A DNA stretch of 34,482 nucleotides, from positions 32,828,319-32,862,800 of the forward strand of contig NC_069004.1 in the NCBI RefSeq assembly GCF_001194135.2, read 5' to 3'. Numbering within the stretch: the stretch's first letter is position 1; the number at the start of each line of letters is the position of its first letter. The notes beneath the pieces were generated by a model that saw nothing but the letters and a program-made list of their open reading frames with translations, had not been told where the DNA came from and did not search any database. Origin of the DNA: Octopus bimaculoides. Its lineage: Eukaryota. Of the stretch, positions 2,810 through 34,482 are shown piece after piece. A program made the position numbers and the translations under genes.

Positions 2810-3275
2810 GCTTTGAGCCTCACAGAGGCAATAACTTGTGGCTGAGACCTTTGGTGATGTGCTGTGCTTCAGAGGACCCGTCAAGCCAAATGCACCCATT
2901 CTGGTGGCACATAACAAACACCTTTCGAGCGTTGGGACTCACAAAGACAAAGTGGCTGAGTTCCTTTCGAGCATTGGGCTTCATGGAAGCAATGACAGCC
3001 CTTTGACATTATGTCATACTTGAGAAGAAGACCCATCAAGCTGAGCAAAACTGCAGTCATGGCAGATACCAGTGTCACGCAAATGGCACCTCTGCTGGTG
3101 GCACATAAAAGCACCCATTACATTCTCCAAATGGTTGGCATTAGAAAGGGCATCCAGCTGTAGAAACATTGCCAAATCAGACTGGGGCCTGGTGCAGCCT
3201 TCCAGCATGTCAGCCCAGTTAAACCGTCCAACCCATGCCAGCATGGACAACAGCCGTTAAGTGATGATGATGATT
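2810..3275 (+). mobile_element. Family C retro-element, long form with internal ~41 bp units and (GAT)n tail
   Basis: Shared 3' block ggttggcattag..gggcatccagctgtagaa..cccatgccagcatgga..taa(gat)n seen more than 10 times in the window. Confidence 0.75.
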
Positions 3276-3360
3276 AAACAGAAAATAAAAGAAGTTCTGT
3301 TTTTTAACCTAAATTCTCTCTAAAATGATTTTTACTTTTTATTTCTTTCTCTTCTCTCAG

Positions 3361-4237: not shown

Positions 4238-4420
4238 ATCATCATCATCATTTAACGTCTGCTTTCCATGCTGGCATGGGTTAGATGATATGATTGGAAC
4301 TGTAAACCAGAGAGCTGCACCAGGTTCCAGTCTGATTTGGCATGGTTTCTATGGCTGGATGCCCTTCCTGACTCCAACCACTCTAAGAGTGTAATGGGTG
4401 TTTTTTACGTGCCACTGGCA
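4238..4420 (-). mobile_element. Family C element (reverse)
   Basis: (atc)n tttaacgtc..ccatgctggcatggg..gctggatgcccttcct = reverse complement of the family C tail. Confidence 0.8.
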
Positions 4421-9489: not shown

Positions 9490-9872
9490 TAAACAGGGCA
9501 AGCACCATTCAAGCATGATCGTTTGCCAGTGCCACCTGACTGGCTCCCGTGCCATTGACACATAGAAAGCACCATTCAAGCGTGATCATTGCCAGTGCCA
9601 CCTGACTGGCTCCCGTGCCATTGACACATAAAAAGCACCATTCAAGCGTGATCATTGTCAATGCTGTCTGACTGGCCCCTGTGCCAGTGGAACATAAACA
9701 GCACCTGCTATACTCTCGGAGTGGTTGGCATTAGGAAGCGCATCCAGCTGTAGAAACTCTGCCAGATCAGATTGAGCCTGGTTCAGCCTCCTGGCTCGCC
9801 AGCCCTCAGTTAAACCATCCAACCCATGCCAGCATGGAAAGCGGACATTAAATAACGATGATGATGATAATG
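9490..9872 (+). mobile_element. Family C element with three internal 66-67 bp tandem units
   Basis: agcaccattcaag starts at 9501, 9568 and 9634; standard family C tail with (gat)n. Confidence 0.85.
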
Positions 9873-9981
9873 ATGAAAGAGAGAGAGCATAAAAATGAAG
9901 TAAAAAAAAACAATTAATGAGCCAAGGAAATTGATAAACGTTTATATTTATTTTGTTTTTGTTTTTTTATCTAATTACCAG

Positions 9982-11429: not shown

Positions 11430-11770
11430 TTTGTGTATTAAGGCTACCACTGGTTTCATTTTAAGGAATACCTCAACATTCATTGAGTTTATCACATGGA
11501 ATTTTGTTCGTCTTCATTTTGGAGACAAACACCAAAATTTCACATGATCATCAGCATTTGATGTCTGCCTTCCATACTGGTATGTGTTGGCTGGTTTGAT
11601 AGGAGCTGGCGAGGTACAAGATTCACCAGACTATGTCTATGCCTATTTTGGCAAGGTTTTTTATGGCTGGATGTCCTTCCTAACATCAACCACACAGCAG
11701 AGTGGACTACTGAGTGCTTTTTGCATGGCAAGGTATTAACATGAAACCACTGGTAGCCTTAATACACAAA
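11430..11770. mobile_element. Fold-back/MITE remnant with 30-bp inverted arms, containing a family C insertion (11543-11730, reverse)
   Basis: 11430-11459 and 11741-11770 are reverse complements at 29/30 positions. Confidence 0.7.
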
Positions 11771-12197: not shown

Positions 12198-12600
12198 TAG
12201 TTTCAGTCATTGGATAGCAGCCATGCTGGGGCACTTCCTTGAAGGGTCAAACAAGTTGGCCCCATTACTCATTTTTGGATCTGCTACTTACCCTATCAGT
12301 CTGTTTTGCCAAATCGCTAAATTGAGGGGACATAAACAAATCTACACCAATTGTCAAGTAGTGGTAAGGAAAAAACACACACACACACATATAGATACAT
12401 ACATGTGTATGTATGTATATATATGTGTGTATGTATATATATCATCATCATCGTTTAACGTCCGTTTTCCATGCTTGCATGGGTTGGACGTTCTACTGGG
12501 GTCTGGGAAGCCAGGAGGCTGCACCAGGCTCCAGTCTGATTTGGCAGTGTTTCTTCAGCTGGATGCCCTTCCTAACGCCAACCACTCTAAGAGTGTAGTG
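12198..12600 (-). mobile_element. Reverse SINE family A 3' part (12198-12375) followed by reverse family C (12441-12600)
   Basis: Same diagnostic blocks as the other copies. Confidence 0.75.
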
Positions 12601-13247
12601 TGTGCTACTCAAACAGGTGCCAGAGGGGGCTGTCATCAACTACGATCGGATATATATATATATATATATGTATGTATGTGTGTATGTCTATATATATATA
12701 TGTGTGTGTGAATATATATATGTATATATANNNNNNNNNNNNNNNNNNNNNNNNNNNNNNNNNNNNNNNNNNNNNNNNNNNNNNNNNNNNNNNNNNNNNN
12801 NNNNNNNNNNNNNNNNNNNNNNNNNNNNNNNNNNNNNNNNNNNNNNNNNNNNNNNNNNNNNNNNNNNNNNNNNNNNNNNNNNNNNNNNNNNNNNNNNNNN
12901 NNNNNNNNNNNNNNNNNNNNNNNNNNNNNNNNNNNNNNNNNNNNNNNNNNNNNNNNNNNNNNNNNTATATATGGGCATGGTGAGAGCCGCTGCTGAGCAT
13001 TAAGATGCATTAAGCATCAGAACATGAAATCAACGATGATCTGGCTGTCTCTGCAACCATAGGGAGCTTGTCTCTCTTGTCACCTCATTAACATAATGAT
13101 TTTGTTCACTTATGAGTTGTTTTGGCTCTTATTTCTAGCAATACTGGTGCTAATTACTGCCCTTGTTCTCTTTAGTAACACATATATTTTTGCCTTTAGG
13201 TTGTAAAATTACAAATTAGCCACTCATATTATTTATTTATATATATC

Positions 13248-14360: not shown

Positions 14361-14743
14361 TTCTTTTATTTATTTCAGTCATTGTTTCAGACAAATCGAC
14401 CCCAGAACTTATTCTTTTGTAAGCCTAGTACTTATTCTATTGATCTCTTTTGCCGAACTGCTAAGTTACGGGGACGTAAACACACCAGCATTGGTTATCA
14501 AGTGATGGTGACAGGACAGACACACAAACACACACATCTGTATACGTATGTATATATATATATATATATATGTGTATATATATATATATATATGATGAGC
14601 TTCTTTCAGTTTCCATCTATCAAATCCACTCACTTTGGTCAGCCCGAGGCTACAGTAGAAGACACTTGCTCAAGGTGCCATGCAGTGGGACTGAACCCAG
14701 AACCATGTGGTTAATAAACAAGCTACTTACCACACAGCCACAT
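14361..14743 (-). mobile_element. SINE family A, near full length (reverse), with internal TA/CA microsatellite
   Basis: Head cacacagccaca, reverse B-box gggactgaaccc, tail tttcagtcatt. Confidence 0.87.
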
Positions 14744-14990
14744 CATCATCGTTTAACGTCCACCTTTGATGCTGGCATGGGTTGGACAGTTAGACAGGAG
14801 CCTGCACCAGACTTCCGTGTCTGTTTTGGCAGGGTTTTTACAGCTGGATGCCCTTCCTAACACCAACTACCCATCGTCTATATATAGATTCATACAGGCA
14901 TGGCTCTGGGATAAGAATCTTACTTCCCAACCTCATAGTTCCAAGTTCAGTCCCCCTTTGTGGCATTTTGGGCAAGTGTGTTCTACTACT
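14744..14990. mobile_element. Reverse family C (14744-14868) and forward family A head (14893-14990)
   Basis: Diagnostic blocks of both families. Confidence 0.65.
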
Positions 14991-17750: not shown

Positions 17751-18085
17751 CCCTTTAGCATTCAAGTTATTCTGTCAAATGTAATCTTTAGTTATTCACA
17801 TTGTTTTGAATTAATCATCTCGTGGCTTCAAGATTTTGATGATGTGAGTCCACTCTGCTGAGTGGTTGGCGTTTAGGAAGGGGGCATCCAACTGTAAAAA
17901 TCCTGCCAAAACAGTCACAGAAGTCTGGTTCAGGATTCTACCTGGCTGGCTCTCGTGGCACCGTCCCACCCGTGCCAGCATGGAAGGTGGACATTAAATG
18001 ATGATGGTGATTAATTTATTTTTAGAATGACATTGTAGGGTATGTGTGAGGGGTCAGATCTGGCCAATTTGAATATCAAGCTGGT
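17751..18085 (-). mobile_element. piggyBac-like MITE family E interrupted by a family C insertion (17847-18010)
   Basis: TTAA+CCCTTTAGCATT; the sequence after the insert is the reverse complement of 20060-20130. Confidence 0.72.
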
Positions 18086-18728: not shown

Positions 18729-18819
18729 TTTACATCCTCTTTCTACGTTGTGGTATGGGTTGGTCGAACAGGGGGCTAATGCAGTTTTTTGAAAAAAGAT
18801 TTGTTATTTCCCATTGCAG

Positions 18820-18905
18820 CTCTTCTTTCTCCATGTTTTACCGTGTGCTTTTCAACCAGTTGGTAATTACTGTTAAGAAGATATTGCCAGGAAAGAAAAC
18901 TGAAT
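18820..18905 (+). CDS. FANCD2: FANCD2 exon E21, partial (3' end in N gap): SSFSMFYRVLFNQLVITVKKILPGKKTE
   Basis: ttgcag acceptor; matches human [23 protein letters not shown]; donor hidden in the gap starting at 18906. Confidence 0.9.
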
Positions 18906-19099
18906 NNNNNNNNNNNNNNNNNNNNNNNNNNNNNNNNNNNNNNNNNNNNNNNNNNNNNNNNNNNNNNNNNNNNNNNNNNNNNNNNNNNNNNNNNNNNNNN
19001 NNNNNNNNNNNNNNNNNNNNNNNNNNNNNNNNNNNNNNNNNNNNNNNNNNNNNNNNNNNNNNNNNNNNNNNNNNNNNNNNNNNNNNNNNNNNNNNNNNG

Positions 19100-19927: not shown

Positions 19928-19999
19928 GTAAAAAATGACAAAATTCTTCAATGGAATTTGGCAGTCCGGATATTTCAGATTTTAACGACACTCATTAAG
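19928..19999 (+). CDS. FANCD2: FANCD2 exon E22 (72 nt): VKNDKILQWNLAVRIFQILTTLIK
   Basis: T-tract + tag acceptor, AAG|gtaatt donor; matches human [21 protein letters not shown]. Confidence 0.96.
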
Positions 20000-20007
20000 G
20001 TAATTAA

Positions 20008-20135
20008 CCCTTTAGCATTTAAACTGGCCATATCTGGACCCAAATATTCTTCCCATTTTATGTTCAAACTGACCAGATCCAGCCTCTCACACCTACCCTA
20101 CAATGTCATTCTAAAAATAAACAATCACATCATCT
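20008..20135 (+). mobile_element. piggyBac-like MITE family E inserted at intron position +9 after E22
   Basis: TTAA 20004-20007 overlaps the donor GTAATT; ccctttagcatt terminus. Confidence 0.78.
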
Positions 20136-21012
20136 ATTGTTATATTTCAAGATGGTGGTTGTTTTTTTGTGGGGAGGGGGATTTTTTCCTTGCCAAATAT
20201 TTTTTTAATTTTTCACTCATTTATTATTGCATCCATTGTTTGGGAATCTTTAGTCACACACCTGTGACCTCTTCAGCGACTCTTCCATCCCACATGTCTC
20301 CTGTTCTCGAGAATGAACTAAAACAGAACAGGAAGTTNNNNNNNNNNNNNNNNNNNNNNNNNNNNNNNNNNNNNNNNNNNNNNNNNNNNNNNNNNNNNNN
20401 NNNNNNNNNNNNNNNNNNNNNNNNNNNNNNNNNNNNNNNNNNNNNNNNNNNNNNNNNNNNNNNNNNNNNNNNNNNNNNNNNNNNNNNNNNNNNNNNNNNN
20501 NNNNNNNNNNNNNNNNNNNNNNNNNNNNNNNNNNNNNNNNNNNNNNNNNNNNNNNNNNNNNNNNNNNNNNNNNNNNNNNNNNNNNNNNNNNNNNNNNNNN
20601 NNNNNNNNNNNNNNNNNNNNNNNNNNNNNNNNNNNNNNNNNNNNNNNNNNNNNNNNNNNNNNNNNNNNNNNNNNNNNNNNNNNNNNNNNNNNNNNNNNNN
20701 NNNNNNNNNNNNNNNNNNNNNNNNNNNNNNNNNNNNNNNNNNNNNNNNNNNNNNNNNNNNNNNNNNNNNNNNNNNNNNNNNNNNNNNNNNNNNNNNNNNN
20801 NNNNNNNNNNNNNNNNNNNNNNNNNNNNNNNNNNNNNNNNNNNNNNNNNNNNNNNNNNNNNNNNNNNNNNNNNNNNNNNNNNNNNNNNNNNNNNNNNNNN
20901 NNNNNNNNNNNNNNNNNNNNNNNNNNNNNNNNNNNNNNNNNNNNNNNNNNNNNNNNNNNNNNNNNNNNNNNNNNNNNNNNNNNNNNNNNNNNNNNNNNNN
21001 TTTCTGTTTCAG

Positions 21013-21051
21013 AAATTTGATGGCCTTCCAAATCTAGGGACTGCATTAAAG
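21013..21051 (+). CDS. FANCD2: FANCD2 exon E23 copy a (39 nt): KFDGLPNLGTALK
   Basis: tttctgtttcag acceptor, AAG|gtaggg donor; same length and pattern as human VFDSHPVLHVCLK; phase 0/0 fits E22 and E24. Confidence 0.88.
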
Positions 21052-21120
21052 GTAGGGACCAAATTATACAAATTTTCTAGACTTCAGTCGAGAGGTCCTT
21101 ATTTTTATTTTCTGTTTCAG

Positions 21121-21159
21121 AAATTTGATGGTTTTTCAAATCTAGGGACTGCATTAAAA
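21121..21159 (+). other. FANCD2: Tandem duplicate of E23 (copy b, 39 nt): KFDGFSNLGTALK; alternative or pseudo-exon
   Basis: Same tctgtttcag acceptor; 35/39 nt identical to copy a; donor degraded to AAA|gcagag. Confidence 0.75.
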
Positions 21160-21208
21160 GCAGAGGCCAAATTATACAGACCTCAGTTGAGAAGTCCTTA
21201 TTTTGCAG

Positions 21209-21450
21209 GCTCACAGGTGCTGGTGCCAAGTAAAAAAAAAAAAAAAAAAAAAAACCCTGCGCTGGCACCATGTATAATGCACTGGTGCTACGTAAAAAGC
21301 ACCCAATGCAATCTATGAAGTGGTTGGTGTTGGGAAGGGCATCCAGCTGTAAGAACCCTGCCAAAACAGTTGCAGCAGTCTGATGCAGGTTCCGGTCAAA
21401 CTGTCCCACCCATGCCAGCATGGAAGGCAGACATTAAACAATGATGATGG
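21209..21450 (+). mobile_element. Family C element with internal poly(A)
   Basis: tacgtaaaaagcaccc..ggttggtgttgggaagggcatccagctg..catgccagcatgga..(gat)n. Confidence 0.78.
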
Positions 21451-21712
21451 TTATTATGGTGGCAAGCTGGCTAAATCATAAGCATGCCTGGCATTCTGAG
21501 TTCAAATTCTGCTGGGGGTTGACTGCTTTTCATCCTTTCAGGGTCGATGGTGGTGGTGGTGATAGTGACAATATTTTTTTGACAGTTCCAGTTACTCAAA
21601 CAACTGGAATGGCCATTATTGAAATCAAAGAAACTTTCTGCTGCTTATTTTTACTGTCTTTACGTATGCTTTATATTCATTTGTTTTAGATATATATTTC
21701 TCTCTTTTCTAG

Positions 21713-21862
21713 AGTGGTCGTTTGTTTGTGGATGCCTTCACCCTGCAAGCGATGCCCCTCCTTGACATTATGTATCGCAGCCAGCATGAAAACATCCATG
21801 GATTACTGAAGAGCATGCAATTAAGTACACGCTCGTTACATCACATCTGTAATCACTCCAAG
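21713..21862 (+). CDS. FANCD2: FANCD2 exon E24 (150 nt): SGRLFVDAFTLQAMPLLDIMYRSQHENIHGLLKSMQLSTRSLHHICNHSK
   Basis: ttctag acceptor, AAG|gtaact donor; matches human YGRLFVEAF..MPLLD..HHLCGHSK. Confidence 0.97.
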
Positions 21863-22127
21863 GTAACTATAACTTTCTCAATTTTATTTCTATCAAATAA
21901 CTTTTTTACCTTCATTGTTTTTCTTTCATTGTTTTTTCCTTCATTTTCATTAGTTTTTTTTATTTTTCCTTCTTTTTCTTCATTTTTTTTTTTATTTTTC
22001 CTTCATTTTTCCCTTCATTGTTTTTCCTTCATTTTCTCCTTCATTTTTTCTTTTATTTCTCCTTCAGTTTTTCTTTTTCCTTCATTGTTTTTGCTTCATT
22101 TTCTCCTTCAGTTTTTCCCTTTAACTT

Positions 22128-24623: not shown

Positions 24624-24920
24624 CCCTTTAGCATTTAATCCAACCATATCTGGAACTGACCAGATACAGCCTCTCACACCTACCCTTCAATGTCATTGAA
24701 ATCTTAAAGCTACAAAATAATGCATGATTAACTGGTGGCATGTAAAAAGCACCCACTACATTCTCAAAGTGGTTGGTGTTAGGAAGTGTATCCAGCTGTA
24801 GAAAAACTTCACCAGGTCAGATTGGAGCATGGTGCAGCCTTCTGGCTCGCCAGTCCTCAGTCAAACCGTCCAACCCTCGCCAGCATGGAAAGCGGACATT
24901 AAACGACGACAAGGACGATG
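24624..24920 (+). mobile_element. Family E MITE fragment (24624-24730) followed by a family C element (24731-24920)
   Basis: ccctttagcattt..cagcctctcacacctacc; family C tail. Confidence 0.72.
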
Positions 24921-27689: not shown

Positions 27690-30600
27690 AATAAACATAA
27701 ATAAATAAATAAACATATAAATAAATAAATATATATGAATAAATATAATGAACGAATGAACAAACGAAAGAACGATCAAACGCACGTACGTACGTAAGCA
27801 CATATGTACGTAGGTACGTACGTACGTACGAATGAATTAATGTACGTACGTACGTACCTACGGACAAAAGAGCGAACGAATGAACAAACTAACGACCGAA
27901 CGCACGTACGTACGAACGGACAGATGTGAGTACGTACGTACGTACGAAAAACGAACGAACGAAAGAACGTACGTACGTTCATAAGTAAGTACGTACGAAC
28001 GATCCAAAGAACGAACGTACGTACATTACTAAATACGAACGAACGAACGAACGTACGTGCGTTAGAATGACCGAACGTACGTAGGCGCGTACATTCGTTA
28101 CTTTGTTCGTTTGTTCGTTCGTTCGTACGTACATATGTACCTACGTTCGTTCATTCGATTGTTCTTTCGTTCGTTTGTTCGTACGTACATACGTACGTTC
28201 GTTCTTTCAATCTTTCGCTCGCTCGTTCGTTCGTACGTACGTACTTTCGTTCGTTCTTTCGTTTGTTCGTTCGTTCTTTCGTTTGTTCGTTCGTTCGTTC
28301 AATCGTTCGTTCGTTCGTTTGTTCCGTCGTACGTACGCTTGTTCGTTCGTTCGTACGTATGTACCTATATTTGTTCGTTAATTCGTTTGTTCGATCGTTC
28401 GTTCCTTCTTTCGTTCATTCGTTCGTTCGTTAATTCTTTCCTTCGTTAGTTCTTACGTACGTACTTAGGTTCTTTCATTCGTTTCTTTCATGTTTCGTAC
28501 GTACGTACATACGTGCGTTCGTTCGTTCGTTCGTTCCTACGTACGTACGTGCGTACATTCGTTCGTTCATTTGTTTGTTCGTTCCTTCGTTGTTACGTAC
28601 GTACGGATGGATTTACATTCGTTCGTACGTACGTAATTACGTTCGTTCGTTCTTACGTACTTTCTTTCGTTCGTTCGATCGTTCGTTCGTACTTACGTAC
28701 GTACGTACCTTCGTTCGTTCGTACTTACGTACATACGTACGTTCGTTCGTTCTTTCGTTCGTTCGTTCGTTCTTTCGTTCGTTCGTTCGTTCGTTCTTAC
28801 GTTCATTCGTTACTTCGTTCTTTCCTTCGTTTGCTCGTTCGATCGTTCGTATGTACGTACGTTCATTCATTCGTACGTACGTACGCTCATTCGTACGTAC
28901 GTACGCTCGTTCGTACGTTCATTCATGCGTATGTACGTACATACGTTCAATCGTTCTTTCGTTCGTTCGTACGTACGGACGTACGTTAGTTCTTTCGTTC
29001 GTAGGTACGTACGTTCGTTCGCTCGTTCCTACGTACGGATGTATGTACGTAACGTCGTTTGTTTTTTTGTTCGGTCTTTCTTTCGTTCGCACATGCGTTC
29101 GTTCCTACGTACGTACGTTTGTTCATTCGTTCCTTCGTTTGTTCGTACATACGTACGTATGTACGTTCTTTCGTTTGCTCGATCGTTCGTTCGTTCGTCC
29201 ATTCTTTCGTTACTTTGTTCGTTCTTTCGATCGTTTGTTCATTCGTTTATTTCTTTCGATCGTTCGTTCGTTTGTTTCGTTCGTTCGTTCCTTCGCACGT
29301 ACGTACGTACGTTTCTTCGTTCGTTCGTTCTTTCGTACGTACGTACATTCTTTCGCTCAATCGTTCGTTCATTCTTTCCTACGTTCGTTCGTTCGTACGT
29401 GCGTACGTTCGTTAGTTTGTTCGTTCGTTCGCTCGTTCGTTCGTGCATTCTTTCGTACGTACGTTCGTTCTTTCGTTCGTACGTTCTTTAGTTTGTTCGT
29501 TCGTTCATACGTACGTACATATGTACCTACTTGTGTACATTCGTTTGTTCGTTAGTTCGTTCGTTCGTTTGTTCGTTCGTACATACGTAAGTTCAATTCT
29601 TTATTCGTTCGTTTTTTATTCGTACCTACGTACGTTCATTCGTTCAATCGTTCGTTAGTTCTTTTGTTCTTTCGTACGTACGTAAATCCGTACATACGTG
29701 CGGACGTTCGTTCGTTGCCTCGTTCGTTAGTTCTTTCGTTCTTTCGTACGTACGTACGTACGATCGTTCGTTCATTCGTTCGTTTCATTCGTTCCTTCGT
29801 CCGTCCGTACGTTCGTTCGTTCTGACATACGTTCGTTCGTACGTACGTACGTTCGTTCGTTCTTTCGTTCGTTCGTAATTACGTTCCTTCTTTCATTTAT
29901 TCGTTCGTAGTACGAACTTACGTACGCACGTTCTTTCCTTCCTTCGATTTGTTCATACGTACGTTCGTTCGTACGTACGTACCTTCGTTCGTTCGTACAT
30001 TCGTACGTACGTGCGTTCGTTCATTCGTTCGTTCATTCGTTCGTTCATTCATACAGATGTACGTACGAATATACGCACGCTCGTTCGTTCATTCATACAT
30101 ATGAAACTTCGAATATACGTACGTTCGTTCGTTCGTTCTTTCGTTAGTTCGTTCGCTCATTCGTACGTATGTACGATCATTCGTTCGTTCGTTCGTTCGT
30201 TCCTTCGCACGTACGTACGTACATTTGTTCGTTCGTTCGTTCTTTCGTACATACGTACACTCTTTCGTTCAATCGTTCGTTCATTCTTTCGTACGTTCGT
30301 TCGTTCGGACGTACGTGCGTACGTTCGTTAGCTTGTTCGTTCGTTCGCTCGTTCGTTCGTACGTTCTTTCGCACGTACGTACGTACGTACGAACGAATGA
30401 ACGAAAGAACGTTCGTCCGTTAATTCGTACGTACGTGCGTACGTTCGTTAGTTTGTTCGTTCGTTCATACGTACGTACGTGCATATGTACCTACTTATGT
30501 ACGTTCATTTGTTCGTTCGTTCGTTCGTACATACGTACGATCAATATTTTGTTCGTTCGTTTGTTCGATCGTTCGTTCGATCTTACATACGTACTTACGT

Positions 30601-33600
30601 ACGTAAATCCGTACATACGTGCGGACGTTCGTTCGATCGTTGCCTCGTTCGTTAGTTCTTTCATTCTTTAGTACGGACGTACATACGTTCGTTCATTAGG
30701 TCGTTCGTTCGTTCGTTCGTTTCATTCGTTCGTTTGTCCGTCCGTACGTTCGTTCGTTCTGACATACGTTCGTTCGTACGTACTTACGTTCGTTCGTTCT
30801 TTTGTTCGTTCGTTCTTTCGTTCGTTCGTAATAACGTTCCTTCTTTCGTTTATTCGTTCGTAAGTACCAGCTTACTTACGTACGCACGTTCTTTCCTTCC
30901 TTCCATCATTTGTTCATACGTACGATCGTTCGTACGTACGTACGTTCGTTCGTACGTACGTTCGTTCGTACGTACGTTCGTTCGTTCGTACGTACGTGCG
31001 TTCGTTCGTAAGTACCAGCTTACTTACGTATGCACGTTCTTTCCTTCCTTCCATCATTTGTTCATACGTACGATCGTTCGTACGTACGTACGTTCGTTCG
31101 TACGTACGTTCGTTCGTACGTACGTTCGTTCGTTCGTACGTACGTNNNNNNNNNNGTTCGTACGTACGTTCGTTCGTACGTACGTTCGTTCGTTCGTACG
31201 TACGTGCGTTCGTTCGCACATTCATACGTACGGACGTACCGTCGTTTGTTTGTTCATATCGTCCATTCGCTCACTCGTACGTACGTACGTACGATCATTC
31301 GTTCGTTCGTTCGTTCGTTCGTTTGTTCGTTCGTTCATTCGTTCGCTCGTTCGTTCGTACGTTCTTTCATACATACGTGCGTTCTTTCGTTCATTCGTTC
31401 GTACGTACGTACGTTCGTTCGTTCGTTCATACGTACGTGCGTACGTTCGTTAGTTTGTTCGTTCGTTTTTTTCGTACCTACGTACGTTCGTTCGTTCAAT
31501 CGTTCATTCGTTCGTTCTTACGTTCGTACGTACGTTCGTCCGTTTCGTTGTTCGTTCGTTTGTTCCATCGTTCGTTCGTTCTTGCATACGTACTTACGTA
31601 CGTAAATCCGTACAAACGTGCGGACGTTCGTTCGTTAGTTCTTTCGTTCTTTCGTACGTACGTACGTTCGTTCATTAGGTCGTTCGTTCGTTCGTCCGTT
31701 TCATTCGTTCGTTCGTCCGTCCGTACGTTCGTTCGTTCTGACATACGTTCGTTCGTACGTACGTACGTTCGTTCGTACGTACGTACGTTCGTTCGTTCGA
31801 TCTTACATACGTACTTACGTACGTACGTGCGGACGTTCGTTCGTTAGTTCTTTTGTTCTTTCGTACGGACGTACGTTCGTTCATTAGGTCGTTCGTTCGT
31901 TCGTTCGTNNNNNNNNNNNNNNNNNNNNNNNNNNNNNNNNNNNNNNNNNNNNNNNNNNNNNNNNNNNNNNNNNNNNNNNNNNNNNNNNNNNNNNNNNNNN
32001 NNNNNNNNNNNNNNNNNNNNNNNNNNNNNNNNNNNNNNNNNNNNNNNNNNNNNNNNNNNNNNNNNNNNNNNNNNNNNNNNNNNNNNNNNNNNNNNNNNNN
32101 NNNNNNNNNNNNNNNNNNNNNNNNNNNNNNNNNNNNNNNNNNNNNNNNNNNNNNNNNNNNNNNNNNNNNNNNNNNNNNNNNNNNNNNNNNNNNNNNNNNN
32201 NNNNNNNNNNNNNNNNNNNNNNNNNNNNNNNNNNNNNNNNNNNNNNNNNNNNNNNNNNNNNNNNNNNNNNNNNNNNNNNNNNNNNNNNNNNNNNNNNNNN
32301 NNNNNNNNNNNNNNNNNNNNNNNNNNNNNNNNNNNNNNNNNNNNNNNNNNNNNNNNNNNNNNNNNNNNNNNNNNNNNNNNNNNNNNNNNNNNNGAACATA
32401 CGCACGCTCGTTCGTTCCTTCATACATATGTGAGTTCGAATATACGTACGTTCGTTCGTTCGTTCTTTCTTTTCTTCATTCGTTAGTTCGTTCATATCGT
32501 TCGTTCGCTCATTCGTACTTACGTACATAAGTACGTACGATCATTCGTTTGTTCGTTCGTTCCTTCGCACGTACGTACGTACTTTGTTCGTTCGTTCGTT
32601 CGTTCGTACATACGTACATTTTTTCATTCAATCGTTCGTTCATTCTTTCGTACCGTCATTCGTTCCTACGTACGTGCGTACGTTCATTAGTTTGTTTGTT
32701 CGTTCGTTCGCTCGTTCGTTCGTACGTTCTTTCGTTCATTCGTTCGTACGTACGTACGTACGTACGTACGTACGTTCGTTCGTACGTACGTACGTTCGTT
32801 CGTTCGTTCATACGTACGTGCGTACGTTCGTTAGTTTGTTCGTTCGTTCATACGTACGGACGTACATATGTACCTACTTATGTACGTTCGTTTGTTCGTT
32901 CGTTCGTTCGTTTGTTCGTTCGTTCGTACATACGTGCGTTCAATTCTTTGTTCGTTCGTTTTTTTTTCGTACCTACGTACGTTCGGTCGTTCAATCGTTC
33001 GTTAGTTCGTTCTTTCGTTCGTACGTACGTTCGTCCGTTTCGTTGTTCGTTCGTTTGTTCGATCGTTCGTTCGATCTTACATACGTACTTACGTACGTAA
33101 ATCCGTACAAACGTGCGGACGTTCGTTCGTTGCCACGTTCGTTAGTTCTTTCGTTTTATCGTACGTACGTTNNNNNNNNNNTCGTTCGTTGCCACGTTCG
33201 TTAGTTCTTTCGTTTTATCGTACGTACGTTCGTTCATTAGGTCGTTCGTCCGTCCGTCCGTTCGTTCGTTCTGGCATACGTTCGTTCGTACGTACGTACA
33301 TTCGTTCGTTCGTTCGTTCATTCATATATATGTACGTAGGAACACACGTTCGTTCTTTCGTTCGTTCGTAATTACGTTCCTTCTTTCGTTTATTCGTTCG
33401 TACGTACGTGCGTACGTTCGTTAGTTTGTTCGTTTGCTCGCTCGTTCCTTCATACGTTCTTTCGCACGTTCGTTAGTTTGTGCGTTCGTTCATACGTACG
33501 TACGTACATTTGTACCTACTTATGTACGTTCGTTTGTTCGTTCGTTTGTTCGTTTGTTCGTTCGTACATACGTACGTTCAATTCTTTGTTCGTTCGTTTT

Positions 33601-34482
33601 TTTTGTACCTACGTACGTTCGTTCGTTCAATCGTTCGTTCGTTCGTTCTTTCGTTCGTACGTACGTTCGTCCGTTTCTTTGTTCGTTCGTTTGTTCGATC
33701 GTTCGTTCGATCTTACATACGTACTTAAGTACGTAAATCCGTACATACGTGCGGACGTTCGTTCGTTAGTTAGTTCTTTCGTTCTTTCGTTAGTTCTTTC
33801 GTTCTTTCGTACGGACGTACGTACGTTCGTTCATTAGGTCGTTCGTTTGTCCGTCCGTACGTTCTGACATACGTTCGTTCGTTCTGACATACGCTCGTTC
33901 GTTCGTTCATTTATATATATGTACGTAGGAACATACGTACGTTGCTTCGTTCGTGCGTTCGTTCGTTCGTTCATTTATATATATGTACGTAGGAACATAC
34001 GTACGTTCGTTCGTTCGTTCGTTCGTTCGATTTTTCAATCGTTCGTTAGTTCGTTCTTTCGTTCGTACGTACGTTCGTCAGTTTCTTTGAACGTTCGTTT
34101 GTTCGATCGTTCGTTCGTTCTTACATACGTACTTACGTACGTAAATCCGTACATACGTGCAGACGTTCGTTCGTTGCCTCATTCGTTCGATTTTTCGGAA
34201 TTACGTTCCTTCTATCGTTTATTCTTTCGTAAGTACGAGCTTACTTACGTACGCACGTTCTTTCCTTCCTTCGATCATTTGGTCATACGTACGATCGTTC
34301 GTTCGTACGTACGTACGTTCATTCATACGTATGTACTTACGAACATACGTACGCTCGTTCGTTCATATATACATATGTAAGTTCGAATATACGTACGTTC
34401 GTTCGTACGTACGTACGTTCGTTCGTTCGATCTTACATACGTACTTACGTACGTACGTGCGGACGTTCGTTCGTTAGTTCTT
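27690..34482. repeat. Large CpG-rich tetranucleotide-periodic satellite, (TTCG/TACG)n plus variants, running off the window end
   Basis: Nearly all sequence parses into 4-mers (TTCG, TACG, TTTG, TTCA, TTCT, TTAG, TACA); the proximal ~400 bp is in the opposite (GAAC) orientation; longer landmark motifs recur. Confidence 0.97.

What the first reader, a model, noticed from the sequence alone, without database searches (positions are those of the whole stretch)
21001..21208. Tandemly duplicated 39-nt coding exon: candidate mutually exclusive exon pair in FANCD2
A ~108 bp duplication copies E23 with its acceptor. Copy a: KFDGLPNLGTALK, AAG|GTAGGG. Copy b: KFDGFSNLGTALK, AAA|GCAGAG. Four exonic transitions change L to F and the human-conserved P to S. 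The spacer intron is only 69 nt, which could sterically favour either/or use, and both copies are phase 0/0. Copy b could also read on to an in-frame CAG|GT at 21217 (32 aa). A third unit start at ~21194 and the adjoining 663-N gap may hide more copies. The ORF track misses this entirely.
Basis: partly seen in the sequence, partly recalled or inferred. Interest (0 to 1): 0.8.

Follow-up and report, generated by a model that had tools for sequence, protein, structure and literature searches.

The report
Duplicated FANCD2 micro-exon: decayed pseudo-exon copy
A 39-base coding exon of the octopus DNA-repair gene FANCD2 really is duplicated in tandem, but the second copy has lost its splice donor and evolves like intron, so it is most likely a dead pseudo-exon and not an alternative exon.

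Summary
The window is Octopus bimaculoides FANCD2. Unit a (21001-21108) and unit b (21109-21204) match at 86 of 96 aligned bases, with one 9-nt indel. Each carries the same acceptor and a 39-nt, phase 0/0 exon.

The duplication is not an assembly artefact. Gap-free assemblies of O. vulgaris and O. sinensis hold orthologues of both a and b, with 4 or 3 extra truncated units between them. The outgroup Argonauta hians has one copy.

The mutually-exclusive-exon reading is not supported in this species.
- Exon a is 39/39 identical between O. bimaculoides and O. vulgaris. It is the exon used in all four annotated Octopus proteins I read.
- Exon b differs at 7/39 positions, against about 7% for nearby intron.
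- The b donor AAA|GCAGAG scores -4.8 bits. Sixty true FANCD2 donors score 4.2 or more, and all are GT.
- The in-frame donor at 21216/21217 scores 2.9 bits and lies at the edge of a SINE-like element.
- In O. vulgaris, copy b replaces a near-invariant Asp with Tyr.

Best reading: a lineage-specific tandem exon duplication whose downstream copy is decaying. I had no RNA-seq, so rare use of b is not excluded. Interest is low.

The parts
19928..19999 (+). FANCD2 coding exon 37 (..VKNDKILQWNLAVRIFQILTTLIK), donor AAG|GTAATT
   Evidence: tblastn with Argonauta FANCD2; RefSeq protein P0144; orthologous exon 37 in O. vulgaris
20338..21000 (.). 663-N assembly gap inside intron 37; unit a begins at its 3' edge
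   Evidence: The matching O. vulgaris stretch (L003 ~64637-65223, 587 nt) holds a tRNA-type SINE-like sequence, a (CT)n run and no copy of the unit
21001..21108 (+). Duplication unit a: pyrimidine tract and acceptor (21001-21012), exon, then 57 nt of downstream intron
21013..21051 (+). Exon a, the constitutive FANCD2 coding exon 38 (39 nt, phase 0/0, KFDGLPNLGTALK); donor AAG|GTAGGG scores 7.85 bits
   Evidence: Gap-free fit to human FANCD2 1284-1296. Used in XP_014781671.1, XP_014781670.2, O. vulgaris CAI9740292.1 and O. sinensis XP_029650518.2. 39/39 identical to O. vulgaris. Donor score
21109..21204 (+). Duplication unit b, 96 nt, lacking the 9 nt AAATTTTCT of unit a
   Evidence: Orthologous to the last unit of the O. 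vulgaris and O. sinensis arrays: same 9-nt deletion and same downstream junction
21121..21159 (+). Pseudo-exon b (KFDGFSNLGTALK): the acceptor TTTCTGTTTCAG is intact and the frame is open, but the donor is lost
   Evidence: 7/39 differences from its O. vulgaris orthologue, against 0/39 for exon a
21157..21165 (+). Degenerate donor of b, AAA|GCAGAG. It is changed at -1 (G>A), +2 (T>C) and +5 (G>A) relative to a and to the b orthologues
   Evidence: PWM score -4.84 bits, flank-only -2.42, below all 60 true donors. Changes polarised
21205..21216 (+). Sequence after the last unit (GCAGGCTCACAG), conserved in three Octopus species. The cryptic in-frame donor CAG|GTGCTG lies at 21216/21217
   Evidence: Donor score 2.86 bits, below all true donors; 14% of GT sites in the window score as high or higher
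21217..21446 (+). SINE-like interspersed repeat with an A(23) run at 21232-21254, sitting in intron 38 right after unit b
   Evidence: At least 9 related copies in the window, in both orientations. Shared with O. vulgaris. The 5' boundary is approximate
21713..21862 (+). FANCD2 coding exon 39 (SGRLFVDAFTLQAMPLLD...), acceptor tctcttttctag|

Best explanation
The window is part of Octopus bimaculoides FANCD2. About 100 nt was duplicated in tandem in an ancestor of O. bimaculoides, O. vulgaris and O. sinensis, after the split from Argonauta. The duplicated piece held the probable branch site, pyrimidine tract and acceptor, the 39-nt coding exon 38, and 57 nt of downstream intron.

The upstream copy (a, 21013-21051) stayed the constitutive exon. 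It encodes the loop and helix start that every FANCD2 has exactly once.

The downstream copy (b, 21121-21159) is redundant and drifts as intron. In O. bimaculoides its 5' splice site has been destroyed (AAG|GTAGGG became AAA|GCAGAG). It can therefore no longer be defined as an exon, and it is removed with intron 38 (21052-21712).

Shown here: the duplication, its age, the asymmetry in conservation, the loss of the donor consensus, and the use of a in the annotated models. Inferred: that b is skipped in vivo, and that any use of its intact acceptor would give aberrant products. Those products would be a 32-aa exon through the weak donor at 21216, or a frameshift through the stronger donor at 21229.
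For: Identity and collinearity:
- The window is identical to GCA_001194135.2 CM046624.1.
- One copy of the exon fits human and chicken FANCD2 1284-1296 with no gap.
- All 205 homologues that could be scored have exactly 13 residues here.

The duplication is real and old:
- O. vulgaris, gap-free, has 6 units at L003 65224-65785.
- O. sinensis, gap-free, has 5 units at L004 64111-64582.
- In both, the first unit is a. The last unit is b, sharing the 9-nt deletion and the junction GCAGGCTCACAG.
- Argonauta hians has a single copy, with no second copy in either flanking intron.

Selection is asymmetric between O. bimaculoides and O. vulgaris:
- Exon a 0/39, exon b 7/39 (Fisher p = 0.012).
- Intron stretches 4/57, 4/57 and 23/331, about 7%.
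- Neighbouring exons about 3%.
- Copy b of O. vulgaris has Tyr in place of an Asp conserved in at least 90% of 40 aligned FANCD2s.

Splice sites:
- A PWM from 60 true FANCD2 donors, all GT, gives a = 7.85 bits, b = -4.84 and 21216 = 2.86. True donors range from 4.2 to 14.1 bits.
- The three donor changes are specific to the O. bimaculoides b lineage.

Annotation:
- XP_014781671.1 and XP_014781670.2 (O. bimaculoides), CAI9740292.1 (O. vulgaris) and XP_029650518.2 (O. sinensis) all read ...TTLIKKFDGLPNLGTALK(S/A)GR..., which is exon a alone.
Against: - No RNA-seq or cDNA could be examined, so skipping of b is inferred and not observed.
- The acceptor of b is intact and identical to that of a.
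- The b frame is open in all three species. This is expected by chance for 13 codons.
- In O. vulgaris and O. sinensis, b keeps a consensus-compatible donor (AAG|GTAGGG). It could still be spliced there.
- The P>S change is tolerated elsewhere: Ser occurs at that position in 20 of 129 distinct homologue sequences.
- Annotated models are predictions. FANCD2 is expected to be a low-abundance transcript (general knowledge, not tested here), so a minor isoform could be missed.
Confidence: 0.85

Rival explanations
1. Mutually exclusive exon pair. Exon 37 splices to either a or b. The 69-nt spacer sterically prevents joint inclusion. The result is two FANCD2 isoforms that differ at L/F and P/S.
For: The two copies have the same length, phase and acceptor, and b has an open frame. 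The spacer of 69 nt is shorter than all 82 introns of the Argonauta and O. vulgaris orthologues, whose minima are 220 and 157 nt. The best branch-site candidate (CCTTAT, A at 21101) lies 49 nt from the donor of a. That is under the 50-bp steric criterion used by Hatje et al. 2017 (PMC5740500). The b copy has persisted since before the O. bimaculoides / O. vulgaris split.
Against: The b donor is GC with A at -1 and A at +5, scores -4.84 bits, and has flanks worse than any of 60 true donors. Exon b has 18% interspecies divergence against 0% for a. No annotated isoform holds b in three species. In O. vulgaris, b has lost the conserved Asp. Because 39 nt is a multiple of 3, nonsense-mediated decay could not police joint inclusion.
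Confidence: 0.05
2. Copy b is used through its intact acceptor as a longer alternative, 'poison' or decoy exon. It would end at the weak in-frame donor at 21216 (96 nt, 32 aa) or at the stronger out-of-frame donor CAA|GTAAAA at 21229 (109 nt). This would give a minor variant or a transcript degraded by nonsense-mediated decay.
For: The acceptor and pyrimidine tract of b are identical to those of a, and 12/12 conserved with O. vulgaris. The frame stays open to 21216 and beyond. Position 21229 scores 5.71 bits, within the range of true donors.
Against: 21216 scores below every true donor, and 14% of all GT sites in the window do as well or better. Nineteen extra stop-free codons are expected by chance about 40% of the time (my calculation, (61/64)^19). 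The extension would insert 19 unrelated residues at the start of a helix predicted with high confidence. No model supports it.
Confidence: 0.07
3. Assembly artefact. Two haplotypes, or a gap-closing error, were laid in tandem at a contig edge, and the genome really has one copy.
For: Unit a starts exactly at the end of a 663-N gap. The assembly is short-read based, with 12 gaps in the window.
Against: Units a and b are joined in uninterrupted sequence. They differ by 10% plus an indel, far above what allelic difference in a coding exon would give. Independent gap-free assemblies of O. vulgaris and O. sinensis carry orthologues of both a and b with the same diagnostic indel and junction.
Confidence: 0.02

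Closest known systems
Tandem exon duplication leaving a non-functional duplicate (pseudo-exon); see Kondrashov & Koonin 2001 and Letunic, Copley & Bork 2002, both cited in PMC5224494
   Same: An exon is duplicated in tandem with its flanking intron and its acceptor. One copy is conserved and used. The other drifts and loses a splice site.
   Different: The exon is very small (39 nt). The locus is dynamic within one genus, with 2, 5 and 6 units in three Octopus species.
Mutually exclusive exon clusters enforced by steric hindrance, with donor to branch point under 50 nt, such as the cases counted by Hatje et al. 2017 (PMC5740500)
   Same: Homologous neighbouring exons have equal length and phase. 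The intervening intron is very short (69 nt), with a candidate branch point 49 nt from the donor.
   Different: The second exon lacks a functional donor in this species, is not conserved, and has no transcript or annotation support. Joint inclusion would stay in frame.
FANCD2 C-terminal helical region of vertebrates (human residues 1284-1296, VFDSHPVLHVCLK; PDB 6VAA, 7KZQ, 6TNF)
   Same: Exon a encodes the collinear segment. In an AlphaFold model of the O. bimaculoides C-terminal 526 aa, this is the loop K-F-D-G plus the first nine residues of a long helix (P0143 residues 340-352; helices 314-337 and 344-372; pLDDT 92-97).
   Different: Octopods have Leu where at least 90% of 40 aligned FANCD2s have Arg (position 5). 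Copy b has Phe at that position.

Membership tests
Mutually exclusive exon (MXE) pair | Neighbouring exons that are homologous, of the same or similar length, and in the same reading frame | tested here: met
   Both are 39 nt and phase 0/0, with 35/39 nt and 11/13 aa identical. Criteria as in PMC5740500.
Mutually exclusive exon (MXE) pair | Both exons have functional acceptor and donor splice sites | tested here: not met
   The acceptors are identical. Donor a scores 7.85 bits and donor b (AAA|GCAGAG) -4.84 bits. All 60 true donors score at least 4.2 bits and all are GT. The feature is met in O. vulgaris and O. sinensis, where b keeps AAG|GTAGGG.
Mutually exclusive exon (MXE) pair | Both copies are maintained by purifying selection across species | tested here: not met
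   Exon a 0/39 and exon b 7/39 differences between O. bimaculoides and O. vulgaris, with intron at about 7%. Copy b of O. vulgaris has lost the conserved Asp.
Mutually exclusive exon (MXE) pair | Transcripts contain one or the other exon, never both or neither | not testable with these tools
   No RNA-seq access. The four annotated proteins from three species that I read contain only a.
Mutually exclusive exon (MXE) pair | A mechanism enforces exclusivity: steric hindrance, U2/U12 incompatibility, competing RNA structures, or frame-dependent decay | tested here: inconclusive
   The spacer is 69 nt and the candidate branch A at 21101 is 49 nt from the donor of a, which is borderline by the under-50-bp rule. 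The branch point is only inferred from the sequence. Decay cannot act because 39 nt is a multiple of 3.
Tandem exon duplication with a decaying duplicate (pseudo-exon) | Head-to-tail duplication of an exon plus flanking intron, present in the genome and not only in one assembly | tested here: met
   for the window. Orthologous arrays in O. vulgaris and O. sinensis. Single copy in Argonauta.
Tandem exon duplication with a decaying duplicate (pseudo-exon) | The duplicate shows relaxed constraint and loss of an essential splice signal | tested here: met
Tandem exon duplication with a decaying duplicate (pseudo-exon) | The duplicate is absent from mature mRNA | not testable with these tools
   Only indirect evidence: it is absent from the annotated models.
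FANCD2 (Pfam PF14631) | Sequence homology along the protein, with a collinear exon | tested here: met
   PDB FANCD2 chains at E = 1e-24 for three joined exons. The window is 100% identical to XP_014781671.1 and XP_014781670.2, which carry PF14631.

The most novel reading that the evidence does not exclude
The Octopus FANCD2 micro-exon array (2 units in O. bimaculoides, 5 in O. sinensis, 6 in O. vulgaris) is a mutually exclusive exon cluster caught between birth and death. In O. vulgaris and O. sinensis the extra units keep AG acceptors and AAG|GTAGGG donors, spaced 69 nt apart. Some of them may be chosen in place of exon a, giving species-specific FANCD2 variants. In O. bimaculoides the donor of b was actively silenced: 3 of the 5 changes specific to that lineage hit the 9-nt donor (post hoc p about 0.007).
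Probability: 0.1. Interest if true: 0.45.

Novelty: new member of a known kind. Interest (0 to 1): 0.2.

Why it matters
The main value is for annotation and quality control.
- It shows that a duplication touching an assembly gap is genuine.
- It identifies which copy is the real exon 38 of FANCD2.
- It warns that homology-based exon finders will flag b as a candidate alternative exon although it lacks a donor.

As biology, it is a small and clean example of how tandem exon duplicates arise, expand by unequal exchange and decay. The three congeners show three different states. It does not point to a new FANCD2 function.

Tried and rejected
- The search for homologous proteins with the 87-aa three-exon query found nothing, although XP_014781671.1 contains that stretch exactly. 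The word index is evidently sparse. Longer queries worked.
- I looked up the minus-strand ORF 21077-21421, which spans the a/b junction, hoping to find independent contigs of the same species. Nothing is on record.
- The look-up of P0143 gave no contig. P0144 led only to the same assembly as the window. So I had no independent O. bimaculoides assembly.
- A search for papers on FANCD2 in octopus gave nothing relevant.
- Haplotype or gap-closing artefact: rejected on the orthologous arrays.
- 'Third unit at ~21194': rejected. The sequence is the conserved post-array junction.
- More units hidden in the gap: unlikely, since the 587-nt O. vulgaris counterpart has none. It cannot be excluded for O. 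bimaculoides itself.
- The open frame of b as evidence of function: rejected as uninformative for 13 codons.
- A rough count of substitutions in b gives about 4 non-synonymous and 4 synonymous. That is too few to tell neutrality from weak constraint.

Full report
**What is in the sequence**

Positions 21001-21204 hold two head-to-tail units with a start-to-start spacing of 108 nt. A global alignment gives 86 matches and 10 mismatches. All ten mismatches are transitions. There is one 9-nt indel, AAATTTTCT, present in a and absent in b. BLAST within the window gives E = 2e-19, and there is no further copy anywhere in the 34.5 kb.

Each unit begins with TTTCTGTTTCAG followed by a 39-nt open stretch.
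- Copy a: 21013-21051, KFDGLPNLGTALK, then AAG|GTAGGG.
- Copy b: 21121-21159, KFDGFSNLGTALK, then AAA|GCAGAG.

The spacer between them is 69 nt. Unit a starts at the first base after the 663-N gap 20338-21000.

**Which gene and which genome**

The downstream exon (21713-21862) and the three joined exons hit FANCD2 chains in the PDB, with E = 1e-12 and 1e-24. One copy of the 13-residue exon aligns without a gap to human and chicken residues 1284-1296, VFDSHPVLHVCLK and VFDSRPVLSICLK.

A long query built from window exons found XP_014781671.1 of Octopus bimaculoides at 100% identity. Its cluster mate XP_014781670.2 maps to GCA_001194135.2 CM046624.1, and the window is an exact substring of that record, gaps included. 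By exact spliced mapping of the Argonauta hians and O. vulgaris proteins onto their genomes, the exon is coding exon 38 of 42.

**Is the duplication real?**

Yes. I recovered orthologous loci through the protein look-ups.

- Argonauta hians (GCA_054771915.1, no Ns) has a single exon: tttttttttcag|AAATTTGATGGTCTTCCTAACTTAGGGACTGTACTGAAG|gtgagt. Neither flanking intron holds a second copy.
- O. vulgaris (GCA_951406725.2, no Ns in the locus) has six units at L003 65224-65785.
- O. sinensis (GCA_006345805.1, no Ns) has five units at L004 64111-64582.

In both Octopus arrays the first unit is the orthologue of a. The last unit is the orthologue of b. It shares the 9-nt deletion and is followed by the same GCAGGCTCACAGGTG..GGTGCCAAGTAAAAA junction into a SINE-like element.

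The units in between are 88-90 nt long and about 95% alike. They have a b-like 5' part (TTTTATGGTTTTCC) and an a-like 3' part that keeps the 9 nt. Their exon carries an 18-nt deletion, which leaves 21 nt, or 19 nt in one unit. That pattern is what unequal exchange between misaligned a and b units would produce, followed by amplification. This last step is inference.

So the a/b duplication predates the split of O. bimaculoides from the O. vulgaris / O. sinensis lineage and postdates the split from Argonauta. A haplotype or gap-closing artefact is excluded.

**The gap**

Window 20003-20337 aligns to L003 64305-64636, and unit a to L003 65224 onward. The 663-N gap therefore corresponds to about 587 nt in O. 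vulgaris. That stretch holds a tRNA-type SINE-like sequence, other repeats and a (CT)n run, but no unit. Extra copies upstream of a are therefore unlikely, although the O. bimaculoides sequence itself is unknown.

**Which copy is the exon?**

All four annotated Octopus proteins I could read contain ...TTLIKKFDGLPNLGTALK(S/A)GR..., which is a alone. They are two from O. bimaculoides, one from O. vulgaris and one from O. sinensis.

Differences between O. bimaculoides and O. vulgaris:

| Segment | Differences |
|---|---|
| Exon a | 0/39 |
| Exon b | 7/39 (18%) |
| Intron part of unit a | 4/57 |
| Intron part of unit b plus junction | 4/57 |
| 5' part of intron 37 | 23/331 |
| Exons 37 and 39 | about 3% |

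The three intron figures all come to about 7%. The difference between a and b is significant (Fisher p = 0.012). Copy b evolves no more slowly than intron.

I polarised the changes with the other units and Argonauta.
- L>F arose before the species split.
- In O. bimaculoides, b then acquired P>S, the last-base G>A, the two intronic donor changes (+2 T>C and +5 G>A) and one further intronic change.
- In the O. vulgaris / O. sinensis lineage, b acquired D>Y, A>S and a silent change.

That Asp is conserved in at least 90% of 40 aligned FANCD2s, and it is the commonest residue among 129 distinct homologue segments. The Pro>Ser position is variable: Pro in 45 and Ser in 20 of the 129.

**Splice signals**

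I built a 9-position weight matrix from 41 Argonauta donors, mapped exactly, and 19 window donors. All 60 are GT.

| Site | Sequence | Score (bits) |
|---|---|---|
| True donors (n = 60) | all GT | 4.2 to 14.1, median 10.2 |
| Donor a | AAG\|GTAGGG | 7.85 |
| 'Donor' b | AAA\|GCAGAG | -4.84 |
| 21216/21217, in frame | CAG\|GTGCTG | 2.86 |
| 21229, 109-nt exon, out of frame | CAA\|GTAAAA | 5.71 |

Even ignoring the GC at +1/+2, the flanks of b score -2.42. That is below every true donor, and 18% of random 9-mers in the window do as well or better. The site at 21216 scores below every true donor, 14% of the window's GT sites equal or exceed it, and it lies at the 5' edge of the SINE-like repeat. 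Copy b therefore has an intact acceptor but no credible in-frame donor.

In O. vulgaris and O. sinensis, all extra units keep AAG|GTAGGG.

**Spacing**

The 69-nt spacer is far below the shortest of 82 mapped FANCD2 introns, which are 157 nt in O. vulgaris and 220 nt in Argonauta. The best branch-site-like motif (CCTTAT, A at 21101) lies 49 nt from the donor of a. That is just under the 50-bp threshold used for steric interference in the human survey of mutually exclusive exons (PMC5740500).

It matters only if b could be spliced at its 3' end.

**Protein context**

An AlphaFold2 model of the C-terminal 526 residues was built with 40 aligned homologues (mean pLDDT 77.9, and 92-97 around the exon). 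It places exon a (residues 340-352) as the loop K-F-D-G after helix 314-337, plus the first nine residues of helix 344-372. The two substitutions in b fall on the first turn of that helix. A 32-aa version of b would insert 19 unrelated residues there.

**Conclusion**

The finding is a genuine, lineage-specific tandem duplication of a FANCD2 micro-exon. In O. bimaculoides the downstream copy is best read as a decaying pseudo-exon that is spliced out with intron 38 (confidence about 0.85).

Other readings:
- True mutually exclusive pair in this species: about 0.05.
- Occasional aberrant use of the acceptor of b: about 0.07.
- Assembly artefact: about 0.02.

What is missing is transcript evidence, which these tools cannot supply.

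The kind of event is well known (Kondrashov & Koonin 2001 and Letunic et al. 2002, cited in PMC5224494). This instance appears to be undescribed. The mildly interesting aspects are the different unit numbers in three congeners, and the clustering of three O. bimaculoides-specific substitutions on the b donor (post hoc binomial p about 0.007). That clustering could reflect selection to silence the duplicate, or it could be chance.

Noticed in passing
L003 65332-65689 (O. vulgaris); L004 64219-64486 (O. sinensis): Between the a and b orthologues lie 4 (O. vulgaris) or 3 (O. sinensis) near-identical units of 88-90 nt. Each has an 18-nt-deleted mini-exon (AAATTTTATGGTTTTCCAAAG), an AG acceptor and an AAG|GTAGGG donor. 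Copy number differs between these sister species. The units look like b-5'/a-3' hybrids from unequal exchange.
   Followed up: partly
window 21024-21094 versus 21132-21193: All 10 a/b differences are transitions (p about 0.017 if two thirds of changes are transitions). Three of the five changes specific to the O. bimaculoides b lineage fall on the 9-nt donor (post hoc p about 0.007).
   Followed up: partly
window 18818-18905 and gap 18906-19098: FANCD2 exon 36 is cut by the gap. The window ends ...ACTGAAT|NNN, whereas O. vulgaris reads ...ATGGAATCTCTTGAA|gtaagt. RefSeq XP_014781670.2 reads ...KKTEVKNDK against O. vulgaris ...KKMESLEAKNDK, so the model probably lacks about three residues (SLE) because of the gap.
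   Followed up: partly
window 28094-34480: About 6 kb of degenerate (TTCG)n-type satellite (TRF period 4, 70-72% matches, plus a 28-nt higher-order period). It is interrupted by several N gaps and produces spurious FVRS-type translated matches.
   Followed up: no
window ~21217-21446, and e.g. 14741-14870, 17861-18013, 9692-9875, 24720-24904, 3095-3276, 4240-4410, 12443-12606, 11547-11693: A SINE-like interspersed repeat family (core ...GAGTGGTTGGCGTTAGGAAGGGCATCCAGCTGTAGAAAC...CCATGCCAGCATGGAAAGCGGACGTTAAACGATGATGATGA) with at least 9 copies in both orientations within FANCD2 introns. The copy after unit b is shared with O. vulgaris and O. sinensis.
   Followed up: partly
window 21904-22118: A T/C-rich minisatellite (unit about TTTTTCCTTCAT, period 12-14, about 16 copies) starts 40 nt after the donor of exon 39.
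   Followed up: no
L003 63890-64305: Just after exon 37, O. vulgaris has about 415 nt that are absent from O. bimaculoides intron 37. This is probably a lineage-specific repeat insertion.
   Followed up: no
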